Below, piece after piece: positions 20,986 to 28,635 of a DNA stretch of 64,000 nucleotides. Positions within the stretch are counted from its first letter, which is position 1, and each line of letters begins with the position of its first letter. A program made the translations under genes and the position numbers. The notes beneath the pieces are model-generated. The model did no database searches, had not been told where the DNA came from, and worked only from the letters and a program-made list of their open reading frames with translations. Origin of the DNA: Setoptus koraiensis (Eukaryota > Animalia > Arthropoda); contig CM106586.1 in assembly GCA_048013815.1 (NCBI GenBank), positions 3,782,001-3,846,000 on the forward strand. The letters run 5' to 3'.

Positions 20986-22039
20986 ATGGCGTGGTAAGTA
21001 TTCTAACCTTCAACATTTGCGTCGTTTTTGGAACTGAGCCTCATCCTGACATCACACAATATTTTGATTATCCTCTTTTCGCAGGGTTGAACGTTTCAGA
21101 CCCAAAGAATTCAAGGATATCGTCGGTAATGAGGAGGCGGTCTCCCGTTTGGAGGTATTCTCCAAAGAGGGAAATATGCCAAATATAATTCTTAGTGGAC
21201 CACCTGGATGCGGAAAGACTACAACCATTTTATGTTTGGCTAGAAAGATACTTGGTCCTAGCGTGAAGCAGGCTGTTTTAGAATTGAATGCTAGTAATGA
21301 TCGTGGCATTGATGTGGTCAGGAACAAGATAAAAATATTTGCCCAAACCAAAGTGACACTGGAACCTGGCAAACAGAAACTTATAATATTAGATGAGGCC
21401 GATTCCATGACGGAATCTGCACAACAGGCTCTAAGAAGGATCATAGAGCTGTACTCGAAAACAACTAGATTTGCTTTTGCTTGTAACAACTTTGACAAGA
21501 TGATAGAGCCCATTCAATCTAGGTGTGCTGTTGTGAAATTCACCAGATTGAATGACAATCAAATTCGAGGAAAATTGATTGATATTTGTAGGGAACTCAA
21601 TGTAAAGTATAACAATGAAGGAATAGATGCCATTATATTTACGTCCCAGGGTGACATGAGACAGGCTATCAATAACCTTCAATCTACTCATGACGGATTT
21701 GAAGAGATAACCAGCGAAAATGTGTTCAAAGTTTGCGATGAACCACCCCCAATAATGATTCAAGAAATGATCAGGCATTGTATCAAAAGAGATTTCGTTC
21801 AGGCTGAGGAGCATATGAGTCATCTGTTCAAACTCGGTTACTCTACAGAGGATCTAATCTCGAGTATCTTCAGAGTTATCAAGTCTTATGAGATGCCAGA
21901 ATATCTTAAGTTGGAATATCTGAAACAAGTGGGTATTATACATTTGAGAATAGTCCAGGGTGTTGGTACCTTGTTACAGATGACTGCATTGTTGGCCCAT
22001 TTCTGCAGTAAGAGTGAGGAATTCCAGACAGCCAAGTGA
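20986..22039 (+). CDS. RFC2: Replication factor C small subunit (human RFC2 / yeast Rfc4 type); exons 20986-20993 and 21085-22039, 320 aa
   Basis: ATG GCG TG|gtaagt ... tttcgcag|G GTT GAA gives [12 protein letters not shown]. Also [42 protein letters not shown] and [15 protein letters not shown]. Confidence 0.95.
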
Positions 22040-22342
22040 TCAGTTTTACGCTTTTTGTATTAATTTTTTTTACAATAAATCTTTGATTCATAGGTGGCCA
22101 CTTTATTACTGATTCTTATTAAGTCCTTATAGTACTTTCAAACAGGTACTTGATTTATGATCTTGCACTTTTGCGTACATATGAGTACATATATATATAA
22201 AATTTATTATTTTTCTATATATATATACATTAATGTGTAGGGTGAATTATATCGTATCTATTATTAATTAATTAATTGTATGTTTTAATAAATCTTGAGT
22301 GAAATGTATTGTTTGAATTCATGATAGATAAAACGTTCATCA

Positions 22343-22993
22343 TCATGATTTACATTTCACACAACGCCCGCTTGATTGCTGTTGGTCATCATTTGTAAGA
22401 TGAACTCCCCTTTGTCCGCCGGATTGGTTTGAGGATGAATTTTGGTCGCCCTTTGGTAGTCTGTTGGCGATGGCTAAGAATATCTCGCTAACATTCATAG
22501 CTGTTTTAGCTGATGTTTCCATGAATAACAATGCATTTTCCATGGCGTAATTTTCAGCTTCAGCTACATCAACAACTCGCTTATTCGTTAAATCTGTTTT
22601 ATTACCCGCTAGTGCTATCACTATATTTGGGCTTGCTTGACGTTGTAACTCTAAAACCCATGTTTTAGCACGATTAAAACTGTCTCGGTTGGTTAAATCA
22701 TAAACAACAATTGCGGCTTGTGCACCGCGATAATACATAGGCGCTAGCGAGTGATATCTTTCTTGTCCTGCTGTATCCCAGATCTCAAATTTAACAGCGG
22801 TATCATCTAAACAAACTGTTTGTGTCAGGAATGCTGCTCCAATTGTGGACTCCTGGTATTCATGGAATTGACCCTTAACAAATCTTAGTACCAGGCTAGA
22901 TTTTCCAACTGCTGATTCACCCAATAGTACCAATTTGAATTGACATATTTTCTTTTGTGCACCGTTAGGCCGGCTAACAACACGGTTGGCCAT
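22343..22993 (-). CDS. RAB5: Rab5 GTPase, intronless CDS
   Basis: [62 protein letters not shown] and ETSAKT. Confidence 0.98.
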
Positions 22994-24002
22994 ACTTGTC
23001 TACTCTATATATGGATAATTGTGTGAGTTGCTTGATTATCTAATAGCGATACTAGTGGTAATAATAATATGGGTATCAATGATAATAGGTTTGCAGTAGC
23101 TGTTGATATGTGAATAATGGTGATAGTAATAATAGCAGCAATAATAATAAGTAATAAAAATAATAATAAGTGTGATGATAATAACAATGAGTGATGCTAG
23201 AAGCTAGTAGCGATGGCTAACTCACATCTCTCAAAATGTTTATCAATAGTGAGGCGTTATTGATTTGACACTCTCATCTTATAGGGTGTCTAGAGCAAGC
23301 GGTCCATGTACAAAAGCACCTGCGCGGCACATTAGCACAGAATACGAATTGCGCGTACAAAAGTGCAATTTTGTGCCGATGCACGGTGAGCATGCAAAAT
23401 AAACTCTTGGCGAGTGAAAACAGAGCCAAACTCGAACGCAAGCGACTTTGAAATTCGCGGGGGCCCGATTTGTACTGCAAGCGTACTGTGTGCTGATGCA
23501 CACTCTGTGCTTGCGTAGATTCCACAGCGCATTTAGGAAAATGCGCTGTGGAAGGCAGCGTAGCGTAAACTGTAGAGAATATCAGCCAGTTTATTACCAT
23601 TTAATTGTGAACACTCTGTATAGATTGTATACTAAAAATGTTAGGTTAAATCACAACACAGAGACAAGGGGAAGCTTACGCAGCGCTTGCATAGAGACAC
23701 ACACAAACAGTCGCACTCGTACAAATACTGCGCAGATCGAATTCACTCATTCTGGTGGTGCCCGCCGTCACCGCTGGGCCGAGTCCGAAAGTACATTATG
23801 TTGCAAAAATCATGGTCAGATTACATGTTGTAGTGGTGTGTTTGTGTGTGTGCTTGTGTGTATGTGTGTGTGTGGGCATGTGTGTGTGTATAATCCTAAG
23901 TTTTTATGCGTGAGCATCCATCAAGATCATTTATTCGCGATCAGATTGTTTTTATTTTATATTTGCACATAACTCAAAAGCACTTTGACACCCTAGATGT
24001 TT

Positions 24003-24446
24003 TTATCTGTCGCGGTCAGGTAGACGCTCCAAAAATGCATCGTCACGGGGTCTATGGGCGAAGTATTCACTGTGTGGCACTGGTGGCAGTGAATTGGGGG
24101 GTAATGTCACATAGAGCTTGTCGCCATAGTAAGTTCCGACTTTCCAATTTGGATTGTCCTTCATCAACTCCCGCTCGGCCTCTCTATTCAGTCTCAACTG
24201 TCTGAGAAATTTTCTCTCTCGTTCGGCAAGAAGAAATGGCTCTACGGCAACATAATTTTCCAACAATTCAGACTTGAAAATTGCCCTCCTTTTGCATTCA
24301 TAGGCAAAGTGTCTGGTGCCCCAATAGGTCCACACTCCCATGATTCCTATCCAGACACATGGTGCAATTAGTCCCTTGACGTATGTCCTTGCTGTTGCAA
24401 CAGTGCCAAATCCGCCTGGGGGCGGCATGTCCTGATGTGCGGCCAT
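24003..24446 (-). CDS. NDUFA13: NADH dehydrogenase 1 alpha subcomplex subunit 13 (GRIM-19), intronless
   Basis: QDMPPPGGFG, a single TM segment, PFLLAERERKFLRQLRLNREAERELMKDNPNWKVG. Confidence 0.93.
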   Translation of the reverse strand: MAAHQDMPPPGGFGTVATARTYVKGLIAPCVWIGIMGVWTYWGTRHFAYECKRRAIFKSELLENYVAVEPFLLAERERKFLRQLRLNREAERELMKDNPNWKVGTYYGDKLYVTLPPNSLPPVPHSEYFAHRPRDDAFLERLPDRDR

Positions 24447-24845
24447 TTAAAATAATAATAATAACAAAAAATACAAGATTCTGTTCGAACCTCGAAGAAT
24501 AAATTGTAATATTGATTTTTGTTTTATATGAACACAAAACAATTCAGAGGTGATGGCCGCCGTAAAATGATCTGACTGCTATGTGCCGACATCTGCACAA
24601 TCGCATGTGGGCACAAAGGTTAGAGACTTAAATCTGGCGCTCAATTCTGCGCATCGGGGGCAGGCAAAAGTTTTTCCCATTGTTCTAATGTTGATTCACG
24701 CAACTGTGTGGAGATCGTCTCATAGCAGATATTTCATTTCACAGTGGCCATCACCTCTGAATAGTTTTGTATTCGTATAAAACAAAAATCATTATTACAA
24801 TTTATTTTTCGAACAGAACTGTGTATTTTTTGGGAAATTGTCACA

Positions 24846-25604
24846 ATGTTGGAGAAGCCTATCGCTTCAAAGAACCATGCGTCTGGTGACTCGGCGGGAT
24901 CTGTTGGATCTTATCCTCCCGATATTGTTTGTGGCATTAATACATCGCCGGGTATCAGTATGTTCACACTAGCAAGCAAAAAACCCATCATTATTAGCGA
25001 GGCAGGCCGAAGAGCCAGCAAAATACTGGCCCAGATTCAACTAGAGGAGAACCAGGATAAACTTCTTGAAGATATCGGTCGATTAGTGCCAAAAAAATGT
25101 GGTGTCAATGAGAGTAGCTCTAGTAAGAGGCCTGACTTATTGGGATCCGCGAGCTCGCCATCTCCTTACTCGTTATCTGGTCATGGTTCGTTGAAACGCT
25201 CTTGCCCAGTATCACCAATCAAAGGCCAGGTGACTCCCATAATCAAGTATAGGCGTGGTAGTGCAACTCAGTTCAAACCTCCGACTATCTCTGACACTAG
25301 CCAGCTGCCAACAAAAGTCAAAGTACAAAATAAACAATCCATTTATGACAGTGATAATCAAGTTACGCGCGTACCCCTCACAGAGAGCAGTATATCTCTC
25401 AGTTCTTTAGTTACACCGCCAGAAACACCGAATCAATCTATCAATGCCAGTCTCCAGGATAACATCAAGTGTGACATGGACGATTGGTCGTCAGAAAATC
25501 TATCGGACGAAAGTTTTGACTTCGACGATGAGGATGACGCAGAATTAAGCCGTATTATAGACACATCTCTCAGGGAGCAGGCTATACAGAACGGCTCGCA
25601 TTAA
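24846..25604 (+). CDS. 252-aa mostly disordered protein with one BRC-repeat-like motif, a BRCA2 TR2-like motif and an acidic tail (candidate minimal BRCA2)
   Basis: ATG-started single ORF. Residues 40-63 FTLASKKPIIISEAGRRASKILAQ resemble BRC. Residues 117-146 KRSCPVSPIKGQVTP...FKPP resemble TR2. The ORF is likely real but the identity is tentative. Confidence 0.5.
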   Translation: MLEKPIASKNHASGDSAGSVGSYPPDIVCGINTSPGISMFTLASKKPIIISEAGRRASKILAQIQLEENQDKLLEDIGRLVPKKCGVNESSSSKRPDLLGSASSPSPYSLSGHGSLKRSCPVSPIKGQVTPIIKYRRGSATQFKPPTISDTSQLPTKVKVQNKQSIYDSDNQVTRVPLTESSISLSSLVTPPETPNQSINASLQDNIKCDMDDWSSENLSDESFDFDDEDDAELSRIIDTSLREQAIQNGSH

Positions 25605-25903
25605 CCATGCATAACCATTAACCACCGAATGCACAGTATGAAATGAAGCAATTATAACATTTGCATAGAACGATAATCTCACACACAAATTAGAATATCC
25701 ACTCACTAATGGTTATCACTCGCCGATTAACTAATTGATACAGACTATCTATTTATTGTAAAATTCTGTTTATTCGATGATAACAATACTTGAAATAAAG
25801 ATTGACTTACAATTGTTGCCATGATTTTTAAGATTTTCCCTCTGGAATATTCTAACCAAGCACCACACAGACATAAATTACTTTTTATAAGCGAATTCAA
25901 ATT

Positions 25904-28036
25904 CTACAGCAACAGCGCCGGATAATCCTTTCCCACCTCTAGCTTTCTGCCATCCATGCCTTTCGGAATGACTAATAAACAGTCGCAGCCTCTCAAACTT
26001 GACAGACGACTACTCTGCTGGTTAATAGATACTGAGATCAAGTATTTTGATGTTTTAGAGTTGAAACAGACTATAACTGCTCGTATAAACTCCATGCGGT
26101 TTTCTAGACAATACTCTTTATCTTTCTCTTCTATGGAGACCAACTCCGCTTTTACCAAATCTAATATCTTTGTCCAATCACCAAGAGAAGCAGGTTCACG
26201 CAAGTTTGCTTCCATAGGATTCAGTTTGATACTTTGGCGCAAGAATGGCATGATCAGAACGAGTGAAGTCACGAATGTCGACACTGGATTTCCTGGTAGA
26301 CAAAAGATGAACTTTTCTTGGCCTTTGAAGAGGCATGTTGCGAAACCAACTGGTTTACCAGGTTTGATATTGACGCGACCAAAATGAATTTTTCCTTTCA
26401 AATCATCCTCAATGATCTCTTTAACATAATCTTTAGTCCCCATGGATGCTCCACCTGAGATAATCAGGATGTCTGTTCTGCTTAAGGCCTGACTCATTTT
26501 CGTGAGCAACTGATCACAATCATCTTTGACGATGCCACAATTGCTTACGCTGAAGCCTTTTTTCGTGAAGAAAGTCGTTAGAAGAGGACCATTCGTGTCG
26601 ATTACACTCTGATCATGAATGTATGACCATTTGAATGGTTCGACCACTTCATCACCAGTAGACAGTATAGATATAGTCGGTTTTTTGACAATCTTTACTT
26701 GATTAACGCCCATCGAGCATAATAGACTTAATTCTACAGGCCCAATCAAAGTTCCTGCACTCATGCAAAAATCTGATGGTAAGTCACTACCTATTTCCCT
26801 GGTATACATATTTTTTTTAATTTCATAGATGGGCACTTTGTTATCAGTTATAGGCCCGGTTTTCTCTATTGGCACTACCGCACAATCCTTCGGCGGTATT
26901 CTACTTCCTGTGTTGACGGGATAACAAAAGAATGTATTCGATTCCTCGATCTTTTGCTTGGCCGAGAAACTTTCAAGATCCGGTAGTAGAAGTGCTTCTA
27001 TGAAAACAAAACTGAACTCTTCAGGTAAATCAGGCGGCATATTGACCAGAAATCCATCCATTGTGGATACTCTATGAGATGGTATGATACGTCTGGTGGT
27101 AACTGACTCAGCCAAAGTTTCTCCGATGACTTTCTGAGCTGACTCATAATCTCCGATGGTATATGTAACAAAGTCACTATATAGACGCGTAGATTGCCGA
27201 CGCAATTCTGAAATCGCATCATAATATTCAACTAGAGGGTACTTGGATTCTCTTGGGCGAACACTCTTGACAGATGGAACGCAACTTTTTAGGCCTCTGT
27301 CTAATATTGGAATGGTATCGTTGAGATTCAGTTCAGTGTTCTTTGAAACTCCGTAGTCTTCCGACTCATTTTCCTCGACAGACATTTCTTGATCATCATT
27401 CGTATTGATAGTGTTGTTGTTCATGTTCACAGTTCTGGAAGAAATGGCTGTTTCCATTTTCGACAGGTTGTCAGAATTCGAAACATTCATTATCTGGTTT
27501 TTTATTTGAGCAGTATGAAAGGCATCTATCGATGCACGATCGTAATTTATCTGGTGTATGCTATGAAAGAGCAAAGGTTCTAGGCAGGCCCAACAATCTT
27601 CGCAAGCCTTTCGCTTCCCAGGAAAATTGACTATGAGAGTATTTTTTCTTATTCCAGCAGTCAACCTGGATAGGGCAGCGAATCGTGTTATATTTAGCGA
27701 GTGTAATGACAAAGCAGCCGTTATGCCAGTACAGTGCTTTTGAATGACGTCATGAGTGGCCTCTGGGGTGACATCATTAGGACACAATCCGGTACCCCCG
27801 ATAGTTATTATGAGTGCCGAATTAGGTTTATCACTGAGCTTAACCAGCCAATCTACAATTGTTTGTCTATCATCCTGAATTATCACTTTCGTAACTGGAT
27901 TGAATCCGAGTTGTGTCATCTTCGCTTCAATCACGGCTCCACTCTCATCAGTGGCGATACCGCTAAAGCATCTATCACTGGTAACCAAGACCGAAGAGGA
28001 ATAGGGACTGAAGTCTTTCGATGACATGATTGACAT
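25904..28036 (-). CDS. GPHN: Gephyrin/cinnamon (MogA G domain + linker + MoeA E domain), intronless, about 710 aa
   Basis: ITIGGTGLCPNDVTPEAT, LSRLTAGIRKNTLIVNFPG, STMDGF, ILSTGDEVV, DTNGPLL, ISGGASMGTKDYVK, GRVNIKPGKP and LPGNPVS. The track start at 28048 is TTG and the first ATG is 28036. Confidence 0.95.
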   Translation of the reverse strand: MSIMSSKDFSPYSSSVLVTSDRCFSGIATDESGAVIEAKMTQLGFNPVTKVIIQDDRQTIVDWLVKLSDKPNSALIITIGGTGLCPNDVTPEATHDVIQKHCTGITAALSLHSLNITRFAALSRLTAGIRKNTLIVNFPGKRKACEDCWACLEPLLFHSIHQINYDRASIDAFHTAQIKNQIMNVSNSDNLSKMETAISSRTVNMNNNTINTNDDQEMSVEENESEDYGVSKNTELNLNDTIPILDRGLKSCVPSVKSVRPRESKYPLVEYYDAISELRRQSTRLYSDFVTYTIGDYESAQKVIGETLAESVTTRRIIPSHRVSTMDGFLVNMPPDLPEEFSFVFIEALLLPDLESFSAKQKIEESNTFFCYPVNTGSRIPPKDCAVVPIEKTGPITDNKVPIYEIKKNMYTREIGSDLPSDFCMSAGTLIGPVELSLLCSMGVNQVKIVKKPTISILSTGDEVVEPFKWSYIHDQSVIDTNGPLLTTFFTKKGFSVSNCGIVKDDCDQLLTKMSQALSRTDILIISGGASMGTKDYVKEIIEDDLKGKIHFGRVNIKPGKPVGFATCLFKGQEKFIFCLPGNPVSTFVTSLVLIMPFLRQSIKLNPMEANLREPASLGDWTKILDLVKAELVSIEEKDKEYCLENRMEFIRAVIVCFNSKTSKYLISVSINQQSSRLSSLRGCDCLLVIPKGMDGRKLEVGKDYPALLL

Positions 28037-28635
28037 TAGTAGTTGCAAATCCTAGAATAGTAATGAATGTGAGTGATGAGTAATGATAAAGTAATGATAT
28101 GTGGAGTGCTTTGTCAGTAAATAAAAATGCAAGTCTATTGTGCTTTTGTTGGAGCCACAGTTTTTCTTATCAGATACAGGGCCTAAACTTTCTCGGGTCT
28201 AACTTTTTTCAGTTACGTTGTCTAGTGCCTCAACGTGGTGGGGCGTAGCAATTGAGGCACGAGCGGTTACGATGGTTCGCTGGGATGCATCAGTTTGCGG
28301 ATATTACAATACCCGACATGATCGCGGGCCAGTAGTCACGCCCTGCGCAAGGTGCGCTTTTGCCCGTAACATCGAGTCGAGCACAGATGTAAACAAAAAT
28401 CGGCATGTTACTTATGCGCGTAGCGAAATCCACAAAAAAAAGACTCCTTTGAAAAAATTCCCAATTCAGTACCCAGTTTGCTTTGTTAGTATTTTAGGCG
28501 GGTATTGAATATGACGAAATCTTTCATGCATGTTTGCAATCGACGCTATGACGGCATTGTTATCGAGACCGCGTCAGAAAAAACATAGGGAACCCATGTC
28601 GAAGACACCATACGACGAATCTGGTTTCTATCTCT

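What the first reader, a model, noticed from the sequence alone, without database searches (positions are those of the whole stretch)
24846..25604. Candidate ultra-minimal BRCA2: one BRC-like repeat plus a TR2-like motif in 252 aa
Seen: F-T-L-A-S-K-K-P-I-I-I-S (24963 onward) and KRSCPVSPIKGQVTPIIKYRRGSATQFKPP (25194-25283), plus an acidic tail. The gene is boxed in by NDUFA13 and GPHN, so no DNA-binding domain can be spliced on. Established: BRC repeats bind RAD51 through FxxA (BRC4 FHTASGKKVKI). The human C-terminal RAD51-filament site reads PVSPI..VSP..FQPP with CDK sites. Drosophila Brca2 lacks the DBD and C. elegans BRC-2 has a single BRC. Inference: a stripped RAD51 loader with two RAD51-binding modes only. 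Caveats: Leu replaces the usual Thr, and the second half is one residue short.
Basis: inference. Interest (0 to 1): 0.72.

Follow-up and report, generated by a model that had tools for sequence, protein, structure and literature searches.

The report
Tiny BRC-like mite protein family
This is a real, expressed and strongly conserved small disordered protein of plant-feeding eriophyoid mites. Its conserved front end resembles the RAD51-binding BRC repeat of BRCA2, so it could be the missing recombination mediator of mites, but the evidence is at motif level only and the "TR2" half of the idea does not hold as an ancestral feature.

Summary
**Observation.** It is confirmed. ORF 24846-25604 (252 aa) carries the quoted motifs at the quoted coordinates and lies between GRIM-19/NDUFA13 and gephyrin.

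**The gene is real.**
- A 1,061-nt gene-sized contig covers exactly 24764-25823.
- An in-frame stop lies at 24762 and AATAAA at 25794.
- dN/dS against an 87%-identical relative is 0.07, as low as for NDUFA13.

**New here: an eriophyoid gene family.** Using the neighbouring genes as anchors, I found orthologs of 101-262 aa in six further mite assemblies, plus a 36-aa N-terminal fragment in a seventh. The shared features are:
- an N-terminal S-F-x-[LWY]-A-[NS]-x-[KR]-P-hydrophobic motif followed by a helix;
- a KRK patch;
- one or two acidic D-W-S-D...E-L-S-R-N-I-S-L-L-E motifs.

**For a BRC repeat.**
- The best hit among 1.84 billion proteins is an 11-BRC-repeat protein, aligned in register.
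- Profile-profile P is 1e-5 to 2e-6, and 0 of 1,000 shuffles reach the observed score.

**Against a BRC repeat.**
- The Pfam BRCA2-repeat model hits no member.
- A PDB profile search does not retrieve BRC peptides.
- The conserved Thr is never present.
- The big-search E-value is inflated by repeats.

**TR2-like block.** The PVSPI...FKPP block exists only in this species and its close relative. There it is almost invariant, so it is a lineage-specific insert and not inherited TR2.

**Verdict.** This is a plausible noncanonical BRCA2-like RAD51 binder (about 0.4). Whether a conventional BRCA2 exists elsewhere in the genome could not be tested.

The parts
24764..24845 (+). 5' untranslated leader, as far as the transcript-like contig reaches
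   Evidence: The contig of run X1 starts at 24764. An in-frame TAG lies at 24762. The leader lies inside one arm of the inverted repeat.
24846..25604 (+). Coding sequence, 252 aa plus stop. A member of an eriophyoid-wide family of small disordered proteins.
   Evidence: dN/dS is 0.07 against L007. All four listed strain variants fall at codon position 3.
24954..25049 (+). BRC-repeat-like module, residues 37-68: the FTLA hairpin motif, a helix and an Ile-Leu dyad followed by LEE
   Evidence: F40 and A43 are invariant in the family. The module aligns in register to Pfam-validated BRC repeats. hhalign gives P 1e-5 to 2e-6. AF2 shows a beta bridge 41/47 and a helix 52-80. dN/dS is 0.05.
25182..25325 (+). 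Basic Ser/Thr-Pro-rich block, residues 113-160, present only in this lineage. It includes the S123-P and T130-P sites.
   Evidence: It has 9 K/R against 1 D/E. There is 1 nonsynonymous against 16 synonymous changes versus L007. It is absent from L004, L009, L011, L012 and L013.
25272..25283 (+). FKPP, an FxPP 'P-motif'-like tetrapeptide (residues 143-146)
   Evidence: The motif class is defined in PMC11229353 and PMC10622577.
25461..25601 (+). Acidic tail, residues 206-252, with D-D-W-S, F-D-F-D-D-E-D-D and a predicted helix at 229-249 (A-E-L-S-R-I-I-D-T-S-L-R-E-Q). It is the counterpart of the family's D-W-S-D-C-D-E-x-E-L-S-R-N-I-S-L-L-E motif.
25605..25823 (+). 3' untranslated region with AATAAA at 25794. 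It overlaps the likely 3' UTR of the convergent gephyrin gene.

Best explanation
The ORF encodes a small, nuclear, intrinsically disordered protein that belongs to a gene family conserved across eriophyoid mites. Its most likely job is to bind RAD51.

Proposed mechanism:
- The N-terminal module (a Phe-x-x-Ala hairpin, then a helix ending in a hydrophobic pair and acidic residues) would dock on monomeric RAD51 the way a BRC repeat does.
- The KRK/basic centre would give nuclear import and perhaps DNA contact.
- The acidic Trp-containing motif with its helix would engage a basic partner surface, with RPA as the obvious candidate. It would then act as a DSS1-like or DNA-mimic handle for exchanging RPA for RAD51.
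- In this species and its close relative, an inserted, almost invariant basic block with Ser/Thr-Pro sites and FKPP may add a second, filament-type RAD51 contact that CDKs could regulate.

Taken together, it would be a noncanonical, domain-less BRCA2-like mediator.

Shown here: the gene is real, appears to be transcribed and is constrained; the family and its motifs exist; the N-terminal motif resembles BRC repeats statistically.

Inferred: every binding partner, and the equivalence to BRCA2.
For: The gene is real:
- Gene-sized contigs with gene-specific depth in run X1 cover 24764-25823.
- dN/dS is 0.07 at dS about 1, compared with NDUFA13 0.083 and gephyrin 0.12.

The family:
- Positional orthologs sit next to gephyrin or in the Rab5/NDUFA13/RFC cluster in L007, L009/L010, L011, L012, L013 and L006. 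L004 also has one.

BRC likeness:
- The exhaustive search of 1.84 billion proteins gave only two hits. The best is a protein with 11 Pfam BRCA2 repeats, and F40/A43 align on its F-R-T-A.
- Each repeat scores 12.8 bits. Two genuine BRC repeats score 15-16 bits against each other.
- hhalign of the family N-terminus against four BRC repeats gives score 23, P 1e-5, with 0 of 1,000 column shuffles reaching it (maximum 16.5).
- Without the window lineage the score is 19, P 1.4e-4, with 0 of 600 shuffles reaching it.
- Against one P0001 repeat, hhalign gives Prob 89% and P 2e-6.
- A small BRC HMM ranked family members 1st and 3rd of 3,174 six-frame ORFs. The first of these, L004, was discovered that way.
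- AF2 draws a hairpin-like bridge followed by a helix.

Context from papers:
- In the spider mite Tetranychus urticae, Rad51 is present but no BRCA2 ortholog was found (PMC13571142).
- DBD-less BRCA2 exists in Drosophila and as a 391-aa intronless protein in moss (PMC12412785).
- FxxA plus FxPP pairs occur in BRCA2 and FIGNL1 (PMC11229353).
Against: - The Pfam BRCA2-repeat model hits none of the seven family sequences scanned (L004 was not scanned), even at E<=10.
- The small BRC HMM scores are only 4.8-7.6 bits.
- A family-profile search of 177,635 PDB sequences does not return the BRC4 or Leishmania BRC chains. Its best chance hit, TraR (M-S-M-F-T-M-A-S-D-K-P-V-I), matches the motif as well as BRC repeats do.
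- The Thr of F-x-T-A, conserved in all four reference repeats, is Leu, Trp or Tyr in every member.
- The big-search E-value of 1e-8 comes from summing 5-6 near-identical repeats. A clearly spurious tick repeat protein reached 2e-6 the same way.
- Most orthologs have 2-3 extra residues between the hairpin and the helix.
- The acidic motif matches nothing in Pfam or the PDB, DSS1 included.
- No RAD51 binding data exist.
Confidence: 0.42

Rival explanations
1. It is a lineage-restricted, disordered nuclear protein with a function unrelated to RAD51. The conserved N-terminal F-x-x-A-N-x-K-P motif and the acidic Trp motif are docking sites for other partners, and the likeness to BRC repeats is a chance match of a short linear motif.
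For: No Pfam hit for any member. The PDB profile search gives an equally good chance match in TraR and no BRC chain. The BRC HMM scores are not significant. The Thr is missing in all members. The ORF was selected for the motif.
Against: The best hit among 1.84 billion proteins is a BRC-repeat protein, aligned in register. The profile-profile score lies far outside the shuffles, also without the window lineage. The resemblance extends over both BRC modules in L004 and L006. This lineage has added an FxPP motif. The related spider mite has no known BRCA2.
Confidence: 0.38
2. It is a BRC-motif RAD51 regulator that is not the BRCA2 equivalent. It would be an accessory or inhibitory factor, like the BRC-like motifs of FIGNL1, RECQL5 or MCM9, while a conventional or other mediator does the loading.
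For: BRC-like A-motifs and P-motifs occur outside BRCA2 (PMC11229353). There is a single degenerate repeat only and no DNA-binding domain.
Against: Those known carriers are large enzymes, whereas this family has no enzymatic domain. No BRCA2 has been reported for the one acariform mite surveyed.
Confidence: 0.12
3. It is an APC/C-controlled cell-cycle protein. The C-terminal D-R-S-A-L-H-E-I-S-N-L of the orthologs fits the destruction-box pattern RxxLxxIxN, and F-x-L-A-x-D loosely recalls an ABBA motif.
For: The RxxLxxIxN pattern is present in L009, L011, L012 and L013.
Against: In all four species that motif is encoded antisense to the conserved gephyrin C-terminus K-G-S-K-F-x-V-G-Q-T-Y, where the two genes overlap by 59-107 nt. 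Its conservation therefore needs no function of its own. It is absent from the window ORF, L007 and L004.
Confidence: 0.05
4. It is not a gene: a chance ORF in an intergenic stretch.
For: No database homolog of similar length and no self-hit in the protein collections.
Against: Transcript-like contig. dN/dS is 0.07 with 92 synonymous against 39 nonsynonymous differences. Orthologs occur in seven further assemblies.
Confidence: 0.01

Closest known systems
BRC repeat of BRCA2 (Pfam PF00634; solved as human BRC4-RAD51, 1N0W, and Leishmania BRC-RAD51, 7QV8)
   Same: Phe-x-x-Ala, then Ser/Asn-x-Lys/Arg-Pro-Val/Ile-x-hydrophobic, then a helix and a hydrophobic pair with acidic residues. The order and approximate spacing are the same.
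   Different: The Thr at position 3 is replaced by Leu, Trp or Tyr. Ser-Gly is replaced by Asn-Asp in most members. Most orthologs have 2-3 extra residues before the helix. The Pfam model does not score any member.
Noncanonical, DBD-less BRCA2 of Drosophila melanogaster (DBD-less per PMC12412785; 971 aa with 3 BRC repeats is from my own knowledge) and of the moss Physcomitrium patens (391 aa, intronless, NLS plus 4 BRC; PMC12412785)
   Same: Disordered, no helical/OB/tower domain, a basic NLS-like patch, and an intronless gene in the moss case.
   Different: Only one, degenerate, repeat. The protein is 101-262 aa, shorter than any BRCA2 in the papers read here. It has an extra acidic Trp motif. 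The moss protein was linked to BRCA2 by HHpred at 94.7%, whereas here the link is weaker (81-89% in pairwise hhalign).
BRCA2 TR2 / PhePP 'P-motif' (KxFxPP; human 3296-KAFQPPR-3302 with CDK site S3291)
   Same: FKPP with a basic residue inside it, Ser/Thr-Pro sites upstream and a basic context.
   Different: No Lys at -2. The T-P to Phe distance is 13 rather than 7. It is present only in the window species and its 87%-identical relative, so it is not inherited from BRCA2.
FIGNL1 RAD51-binding region (A-motif and P-motif 40 residues apart) and RAD51AP1 (WxPP)
   Same: An A-type and a P-type motif combined in one disordered stretch.
   Different: The motifs are about 100 residues apart here. There is no AAA ATPase and no detectable sequence relationship.
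DSS1/Sem1 (acidic, Trp-rich BRCA2 partner)
   Same: Composition only: acidic runs around Trp, followed by a short helix. The DSS1 sequence is recalled from my own knowledge.
   Different: No Pfam DSS1_SEM1 hit and no PDB profile hit. This is a resemblance, not membership.

Membership tests
BRCA2 (canonical) | At least one BRC repeat recognised by the curated Pfam model PF00634 | tested here: not met
   No hit for the ORF, for its pieces at E<=10, or for any of 7 family members. The same scan gives E 7e-83 for the control P0001.
BRCA2 (canonical) | Two-module BRC signature: an FxxA hairpin, then a helix ending in a hydrophobic pair with acidic residues | tested here: inconclusive
   The pattern is present and conserved. 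hhalign gives P 1e-5 to 2e-6 and beats all shuffles. However, HMM scores are 4.8-7.6 bits, the PDB profile search misses BRC chains, and the Thr is absent.
BRCA2 (canonical) | DNA-binding domain (helical domain, OB folds, tower) that binds DSS1 | tested here: not met
   No Pfam domain. AF2 gives pLDDT 50 and no fold. The ORF is closed by stops, and the contig is colinear with the genome.
BRCA2 (canonical or noncanonical) | Direct binding to RAD51 and promotion of RAD51 loading | not testable with these tools
   No complex prediction or experiment was available. RAD51 of this genome is not in the window.
BRCA2 (canonical or noncanonical) | The only BRCA2-like gene of the genome | not testable with these tools
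   Only the 64-kb window could be read. The scan's notes mention no BRCA2. A paper finds none in Tetranychus urticae.
Noncanonical BRCA2 (Drosophila, moss) | BRC repeat(s) plus an NLS in a disordered protein without a DBD | tested here: inconclusive
   Disorder, a basic patch and the lack of a DBD are met. The BRC repeat is only motif-level (see above).
BRCA2 TR2 / P-motif | KxFxPP core with a CDK Ser-Pro 7 residues upstream, conserved among orthologs | tested here: not met
   FKPP is present, but Thr stands at -2, the T-P lies 13 residues upstream, and the block is missing in five complete orthologs.
DSS1/Sem1 | Match to the DSS1_SEM1 profile or to solved DSS1 chains | tested here: not met
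APC/C substrates (D-box) | A functional RxxLxxIxN degron | tested here: not met
   The pattern is absent from the window ORF. In the orthologs it is antisense to the conserved end of gephyrin.

The most novel reading that the evidence does not exclude
Eriophyoid mites, and perhaps acariform mites in general, have replaced conventional BRCA2 by a 100-260-residue disordered protein. It would have one degenerate BRC-type RAD51 hook and an acidic, DSS1-like RPA handle fused in the same chain, making it the smallest recombination mediator known in animals. In this lineage it has additionally and independently evolved a TR2-like, CDK-gated FxPP filament clamp.
Probability: 0.25. Interest if true: 0.85.

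Novelty: new variant of a known kind. Interest (0 to 1): 0.6.

Why it matters
BRCA2 is regarded as the central RAD51 loader of animals. Yet a 2026 survey found no BRCA2 ortholog in the spider mite although Rad51 is present, and DBD-less BRCA2 proteins have only recently been accepted as a class. If this family binds RAD51, it would define how little of BRCA2 is needed in an animal: one hook, a nuclear signal and an acidic handle. It would also give a 100-250-residue model for mediator biochemistry and explain the 'missing' BRCA2 of mites. The lineage-specific FKPP block would be a case of convergent gain of a filament-binding motif. If it does not bind RAD51, the result is still a newly defined, strongly constrained orphan family of the smallest arthropod genomes.

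Tried and rejected
- **Word-index protein search with the ORF.** Nothing found.
- **ESM Atlas, by features and by structure.** Nothing usable; the Atlas model of ortholog P0040 has pTM 0.19.
- **phmmer and profile searches of the PDB.** Queries were the ORF, the whole-family profile, the acidic-motif profile and the N-terminal profile. No BRC or DSS1 chain was returned, only chance hits.
- **Pfam on pieces and on seven family members.** Nothing relevant.
- **Metagenome scans.** The ORF gave nothing. The sub-alignment A2 returned only the already known JGI contig and a twin.
- **NDUFA13 anchor for the closest relative.** The contig ends just where the ortholog would start.
- **Second big-search hit, P0002.** This is an Amblyomma hypothetical protein with tandem repeats. 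It scores 6 bits per repeat, so I rejected it as a repeat-inflated chance match.
- **UIM, SIM, LIR, PALB2-binding and RPA70N/TFIIH-type readings of the acidic motif.** I considered these from memory only. None is supported by a tool, so they remain leads.
- **D-box reading.** Rejected as evidence after I found the antisense overlap with gephyrin.
- **RNA run X12.** This raw-read run of the same organism label carried essentially no reads of this locus, so it says nothing about expression.

Full report
**1. Observation**

The window holds an ATG-initiated ORF at 24846-25604 (+) of 252 codons.
- The sequence F-T-L-A-S-K-K-P-I-I-I-S begins at 24963 (F40).
- The stretch from K117 to P146, ending in F-K-P-P, spans 25194-25283.
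- The last 47 residues carry 15 acidic and 3 basic residues.
- The flanking genes are GRIM-19/NDUFA13 (24003-24446, minus strand, Pfam E 2e-36) and gephyrin/MoeA (25904-28048, minus strand).

**2. Organism**

Earlier notes of this scan call the genome an intron-poor, plant-feeding mite. My own searches agree.
- The nearest relatives of the gephyrin neighbour are single-ORF genes on compact contigs.
- The only named one is from the eriophyoid Aceria tosichella.

I did not establish the species. The published eriophyoid genome paper (PMC7738191) does not mention BRCA2, RAD51 or DNA repair.

**3. Is it a gene?**

*Transcription.* I laid four public runs on 21000-26900, which is 5,901 letters and within the operators' limit.
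- Run X1 gives gene-sized contigs with gene-specific depth: Rab5 at 29-33, NDUFA13 at 26 (23893-24552), this ORF at 21 (one 1,061-nt contig, 24764-25823, no mismatch, no joint), and gephyrin at 0-5.
- Almost nothing lies in the 24553-24763 spacer.
- Run X6 covers genes and spacers evenly, as DNA does.
- I read X1 as RNA-derived. This is an inference, because the record does not state its kind.

*Gene limits.* The contig begins two bases after an in-frame TAG (24762) and ends 24 nt after an AATAAA (25794). The message is therefore unspliced and the protein cannot be longer.

*Selection.*
- The four strain variants listed inside the ORF are all at third codon positions.
- Against the ortholog in a related assembly (L007, 87% identical), Nei-Gojobori counts are 92 synonymous and 39 nonsynonymous differences. 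That gives dS about 1.0 and dN/dS 0.07.
- The neighbours give 0.083 (NDUFA13) and 0.12 (gephyrin).
- Residues 113-205 have 2 nonsynonymous against 28 synonymous changes.

**4. Relatives**

Direct searches found no protein of similar length. The exhaustive search found no ortholog either. I therefore used the conserved neighbours as anchors and fetched their contigs.

*Positional orthologs.* In five assemblies a small, unannotated gene lies tail-to-tail with gephyrin, as in the window:
- L007 (249 aa);
- L011 (about 196 aa from the likely start);
- L012 (239 aa);
- L009/L010 (188 aa);
- L013 (193 aa).

*Synteny.* In L009/L010 the order is gephyrin, this gene, Rab5, NDUFA13, RFC. These are the same genes as in the window.

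*Further members.*
- L006 holds the first 36 residues of another member, right after Rab5.
- A 101-aa member in L004 turned up as the top hit of a BRC HMM.

*Shared features* (alignments A1, A2, A4):
- (i) Within the first 6-20 residues (residue 40 in the window lineage): S-S-F-x-[L/W/Y]-A-[N/S/D]-x-[K/R/Q]-P-hydrophobic-x-hydrophobic, followed by a helix-prone stretch. F and A are invariant.
- (ii) A KRK-type basic patch.
- (iii) One or two copies of N-D-D-D-I-D-W-S-D-C-D-E-x-E-I-S-R-N-I-S-L-L-E-Q. The window tail (D-D-W-S ... D-D-A-E-L-S-R-I-I-D-T-S-L-R-E-Q) is the diverged counterpart.

*The D-box-like end.* A fourth conserved piece, D-R-S-A-L-H-E-I-S-N-L at the end of four orthologs, looks like a destruction box. 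It is encoded antisense to the conserved last residues of gephyrin, because the two genes overlap by 59-107 nt there. It is absent from the window, L007 and L004. I do not count it as a feature of the protein.

**5. Is the N-terminal motif a BRC repeat?**

*For:*
- The exhaustive search of 1.84 billion representatives returned two proteins only.
  - The better one, P0001 (E 1e-8), consists of 11 Pfam BRCA2 repeats (E 7e-83).
  - The ORF's residues 29-98 align on its repeats with F40 on the Phe and A43 on the Ala of F-R-T-A.
- Profile-profile comparison of the family N-termini used four reference repeats: human BRC4 and Leishmania BRC as printed, and the two repeat types of P0001.
  - The score is 23 (P 1e-5, probability 82%).
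  - 1,000 column shuffles give 6.9 ± 1.7 with a maximum of 16.5.
  - Leaving out the window lineage still gives 19 (P 1.4e-4, 0 of 600 shuffles).
  - The tool's own hhalign against one P0001 repeat gives 89% and P 2e-6.
- L004 reads K-E-S-T-A-K-A-K-S-L-L-S where BRC4 reads K-E-S-L-D-K-V-K-N-L-F-D. The likeness therefore covers the second BRC module as well.
- AlphaFold2 with the family alignment is otherwise disordered (pLDDT 50). It draws a beta bridge between residues 41 and 47 and a helix at 52-80, which is the BRC topology.

*Against:*
- Each single repeat of P0001 scores only 12.8 bits. The E-value comes from adding near-identical repeats. A plainly unrelated tick repeat protein (P0002, 6 bits per repeat) reached E 2e-6 in the same way.
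- For scale, genuine BRC repeats score 15-16 bits against each other.
- The curated Pfam model hits none of the seven sequences scanned.
- My four-sequence HMM gives 4.8-7.6 bits.
- The family profile searched against all PDB sequences does not return the BRC chains. It returns a chance match in TraR that is as good as any BRC match.
- The Thr of F-x-T-A is never present.

*Weighing.* A real BRC-type RAD51 hook and a chance resemblance of a conserved docking motif are about equally likely. I lean slightly to the former, because an unbiased search of the whole library pointed to BRC repeats and because of the biological context below.

**6. The TR2-like block**

The human motif was checked in PMC10622577.
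- Residues 3289-3304 bind the filament.
- The core is 3296-K-A-F-Q-P-P-R-3302.
- S3291 lies seven residues before F3298.
- The shared pattern with PhePP is KxFxPP.

The window has T-Q-F-K-P-P-T, with T130-P 13 residues and S123-P 20 residues upstream. So FxPP is present, but the Lys at -2 and the spacing are not.

More important, the whole block (about residues 95-205) exists only in the window and L007. The five complete more distant orthologs have a short KRK linker there and no [F/W]xPP anywhere. It is therefore not inherited from BRCA2.

The block is nevertheless the most constrained part of the protein in this lineage. It is basic (9 K/R, 1 D/E in residues 113-160) and holds one of the protein's four Phe. 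A functional, convergently acquired P-motif or a DNA/partner-binding segment is possible (my estimate about 0.25), but it is untested.

**7. Comparison with what is known**

- Canonical BRCA2 membership fails on the Pfam repeat model and on the DNA-binding domain.
- The closest known kind is the noncanonical, DBD-less BRCA2 of Drosophila and of moss. The moss protein has 391 aa, is intronless, and carries an NLS plus four BRC repeats (PMC12412785).
- A- and P-motif pairs also occur in FIGNL1 (PMC11229353).
- A 2026 survey of DSB-repair genes lists Rad51, Rad54 and RPA for Tetranychus urticae but no BRCA2, BRCA1 or RAD52 (PMC13571142). Acariform mites therefore lack a known RAD51 mediator.
- An unchecked note of this scan says RAD51 is full-length in this genome.
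- The acidic Trp motif recalls DSS1 and RPA70N- or TFIIH-binding acidic peptides. That comes from my memory only, and no tool supports it.

**8. Limits**

- I could not read the rest of the genome, so I could not test whether a conventional BRCA2 exists elsewhere.
- No complex prediction was possible.
- The two short reference BRC peptides were copied from the output into scripts.
- No spliced model was needed.

**9. Verdict**

- The gene is real and belongs to a previously undescribed eriophyoid family.
- The BRC-like reading is plausible but unproven (about 0.4).
- The TR2 reading fails as homology.
- 'Ultra-minimal BRCA2' remains an attractive, directly testable hypothesis (about 0.25-0.3).

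Noticed in passing
window 24465-24607 and 24697-24832: There is a large imperfect inverted repeat between the divergent NDUFA13 and ORF start codons: 116-nt arms at 82% complementarity plus adjoining 25-nt arms at 88%. The transcript-like contigs of run X1 end at 24552 and start at 24764. Each arm therefore lies in the leader or promoter of one gene, which would make a mirror-image bidirectional promoter region.
   Followed up: partly
L009:7916-7974, L011:5278-5351, L012:7057-7163, L013:6880-6977: In four eriophyoid assemblies the family gene and gephyrin overlap tail-to-tail by 59-107 coding nucleotides. The D-box-like D-R-S-A-L-H-E-I-S-N-L of one gene is the antisense reading of the conserved K-G-S-K-F-x-V-G-Q-T-Y of the other. 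In the window the two genes are 300 nt apart and only their 3' UTR signals interleave.
   Followed up: yes
L009/L010 6001-12979; L006 1-2968; window 21149-28048: A gene cluster (gephyrin, the small family gene, Rab5, NDUFA13, RFC small subunit, often U11-48K nearby) is kept together across eriophyoid assemblies whose gephyrins are only 35-41% identical. There are local inversions of Rab5 and NDUFA13.
   Followed up: partly
P0001 (ENA metagenome contig of 47.5 kb): This 1,072-aa protein is made almost entirely of 11 BRC repeats of two alternating types. The 146-residue double units are nearly identical to one another, and there is no DNA-binding domain in the called product. The organism is unknown.
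   Followed up: no
P0002 = KAK8777889.1, Amblyomma americanum: This tick hypothetical protein has about seven near-identical 127-residue tandem repeats. It reached E 2e-6 against the ORF purely by repeat summation (6 bits each). It is a useful warning for reading big-search E-values on repeat proteins.
   Followed up: yes
window 23000-23980: The spacer between Rab5 and NDUFA13 shows very uneven depth in the DNA-like run X6 (up to about 300 against about 10 elsewhere), with many partial contigs and loose ends. The tool skipped a repeat at 23834-23892. This suggests a dispersed repeat or mobile element.
   Followed up: no
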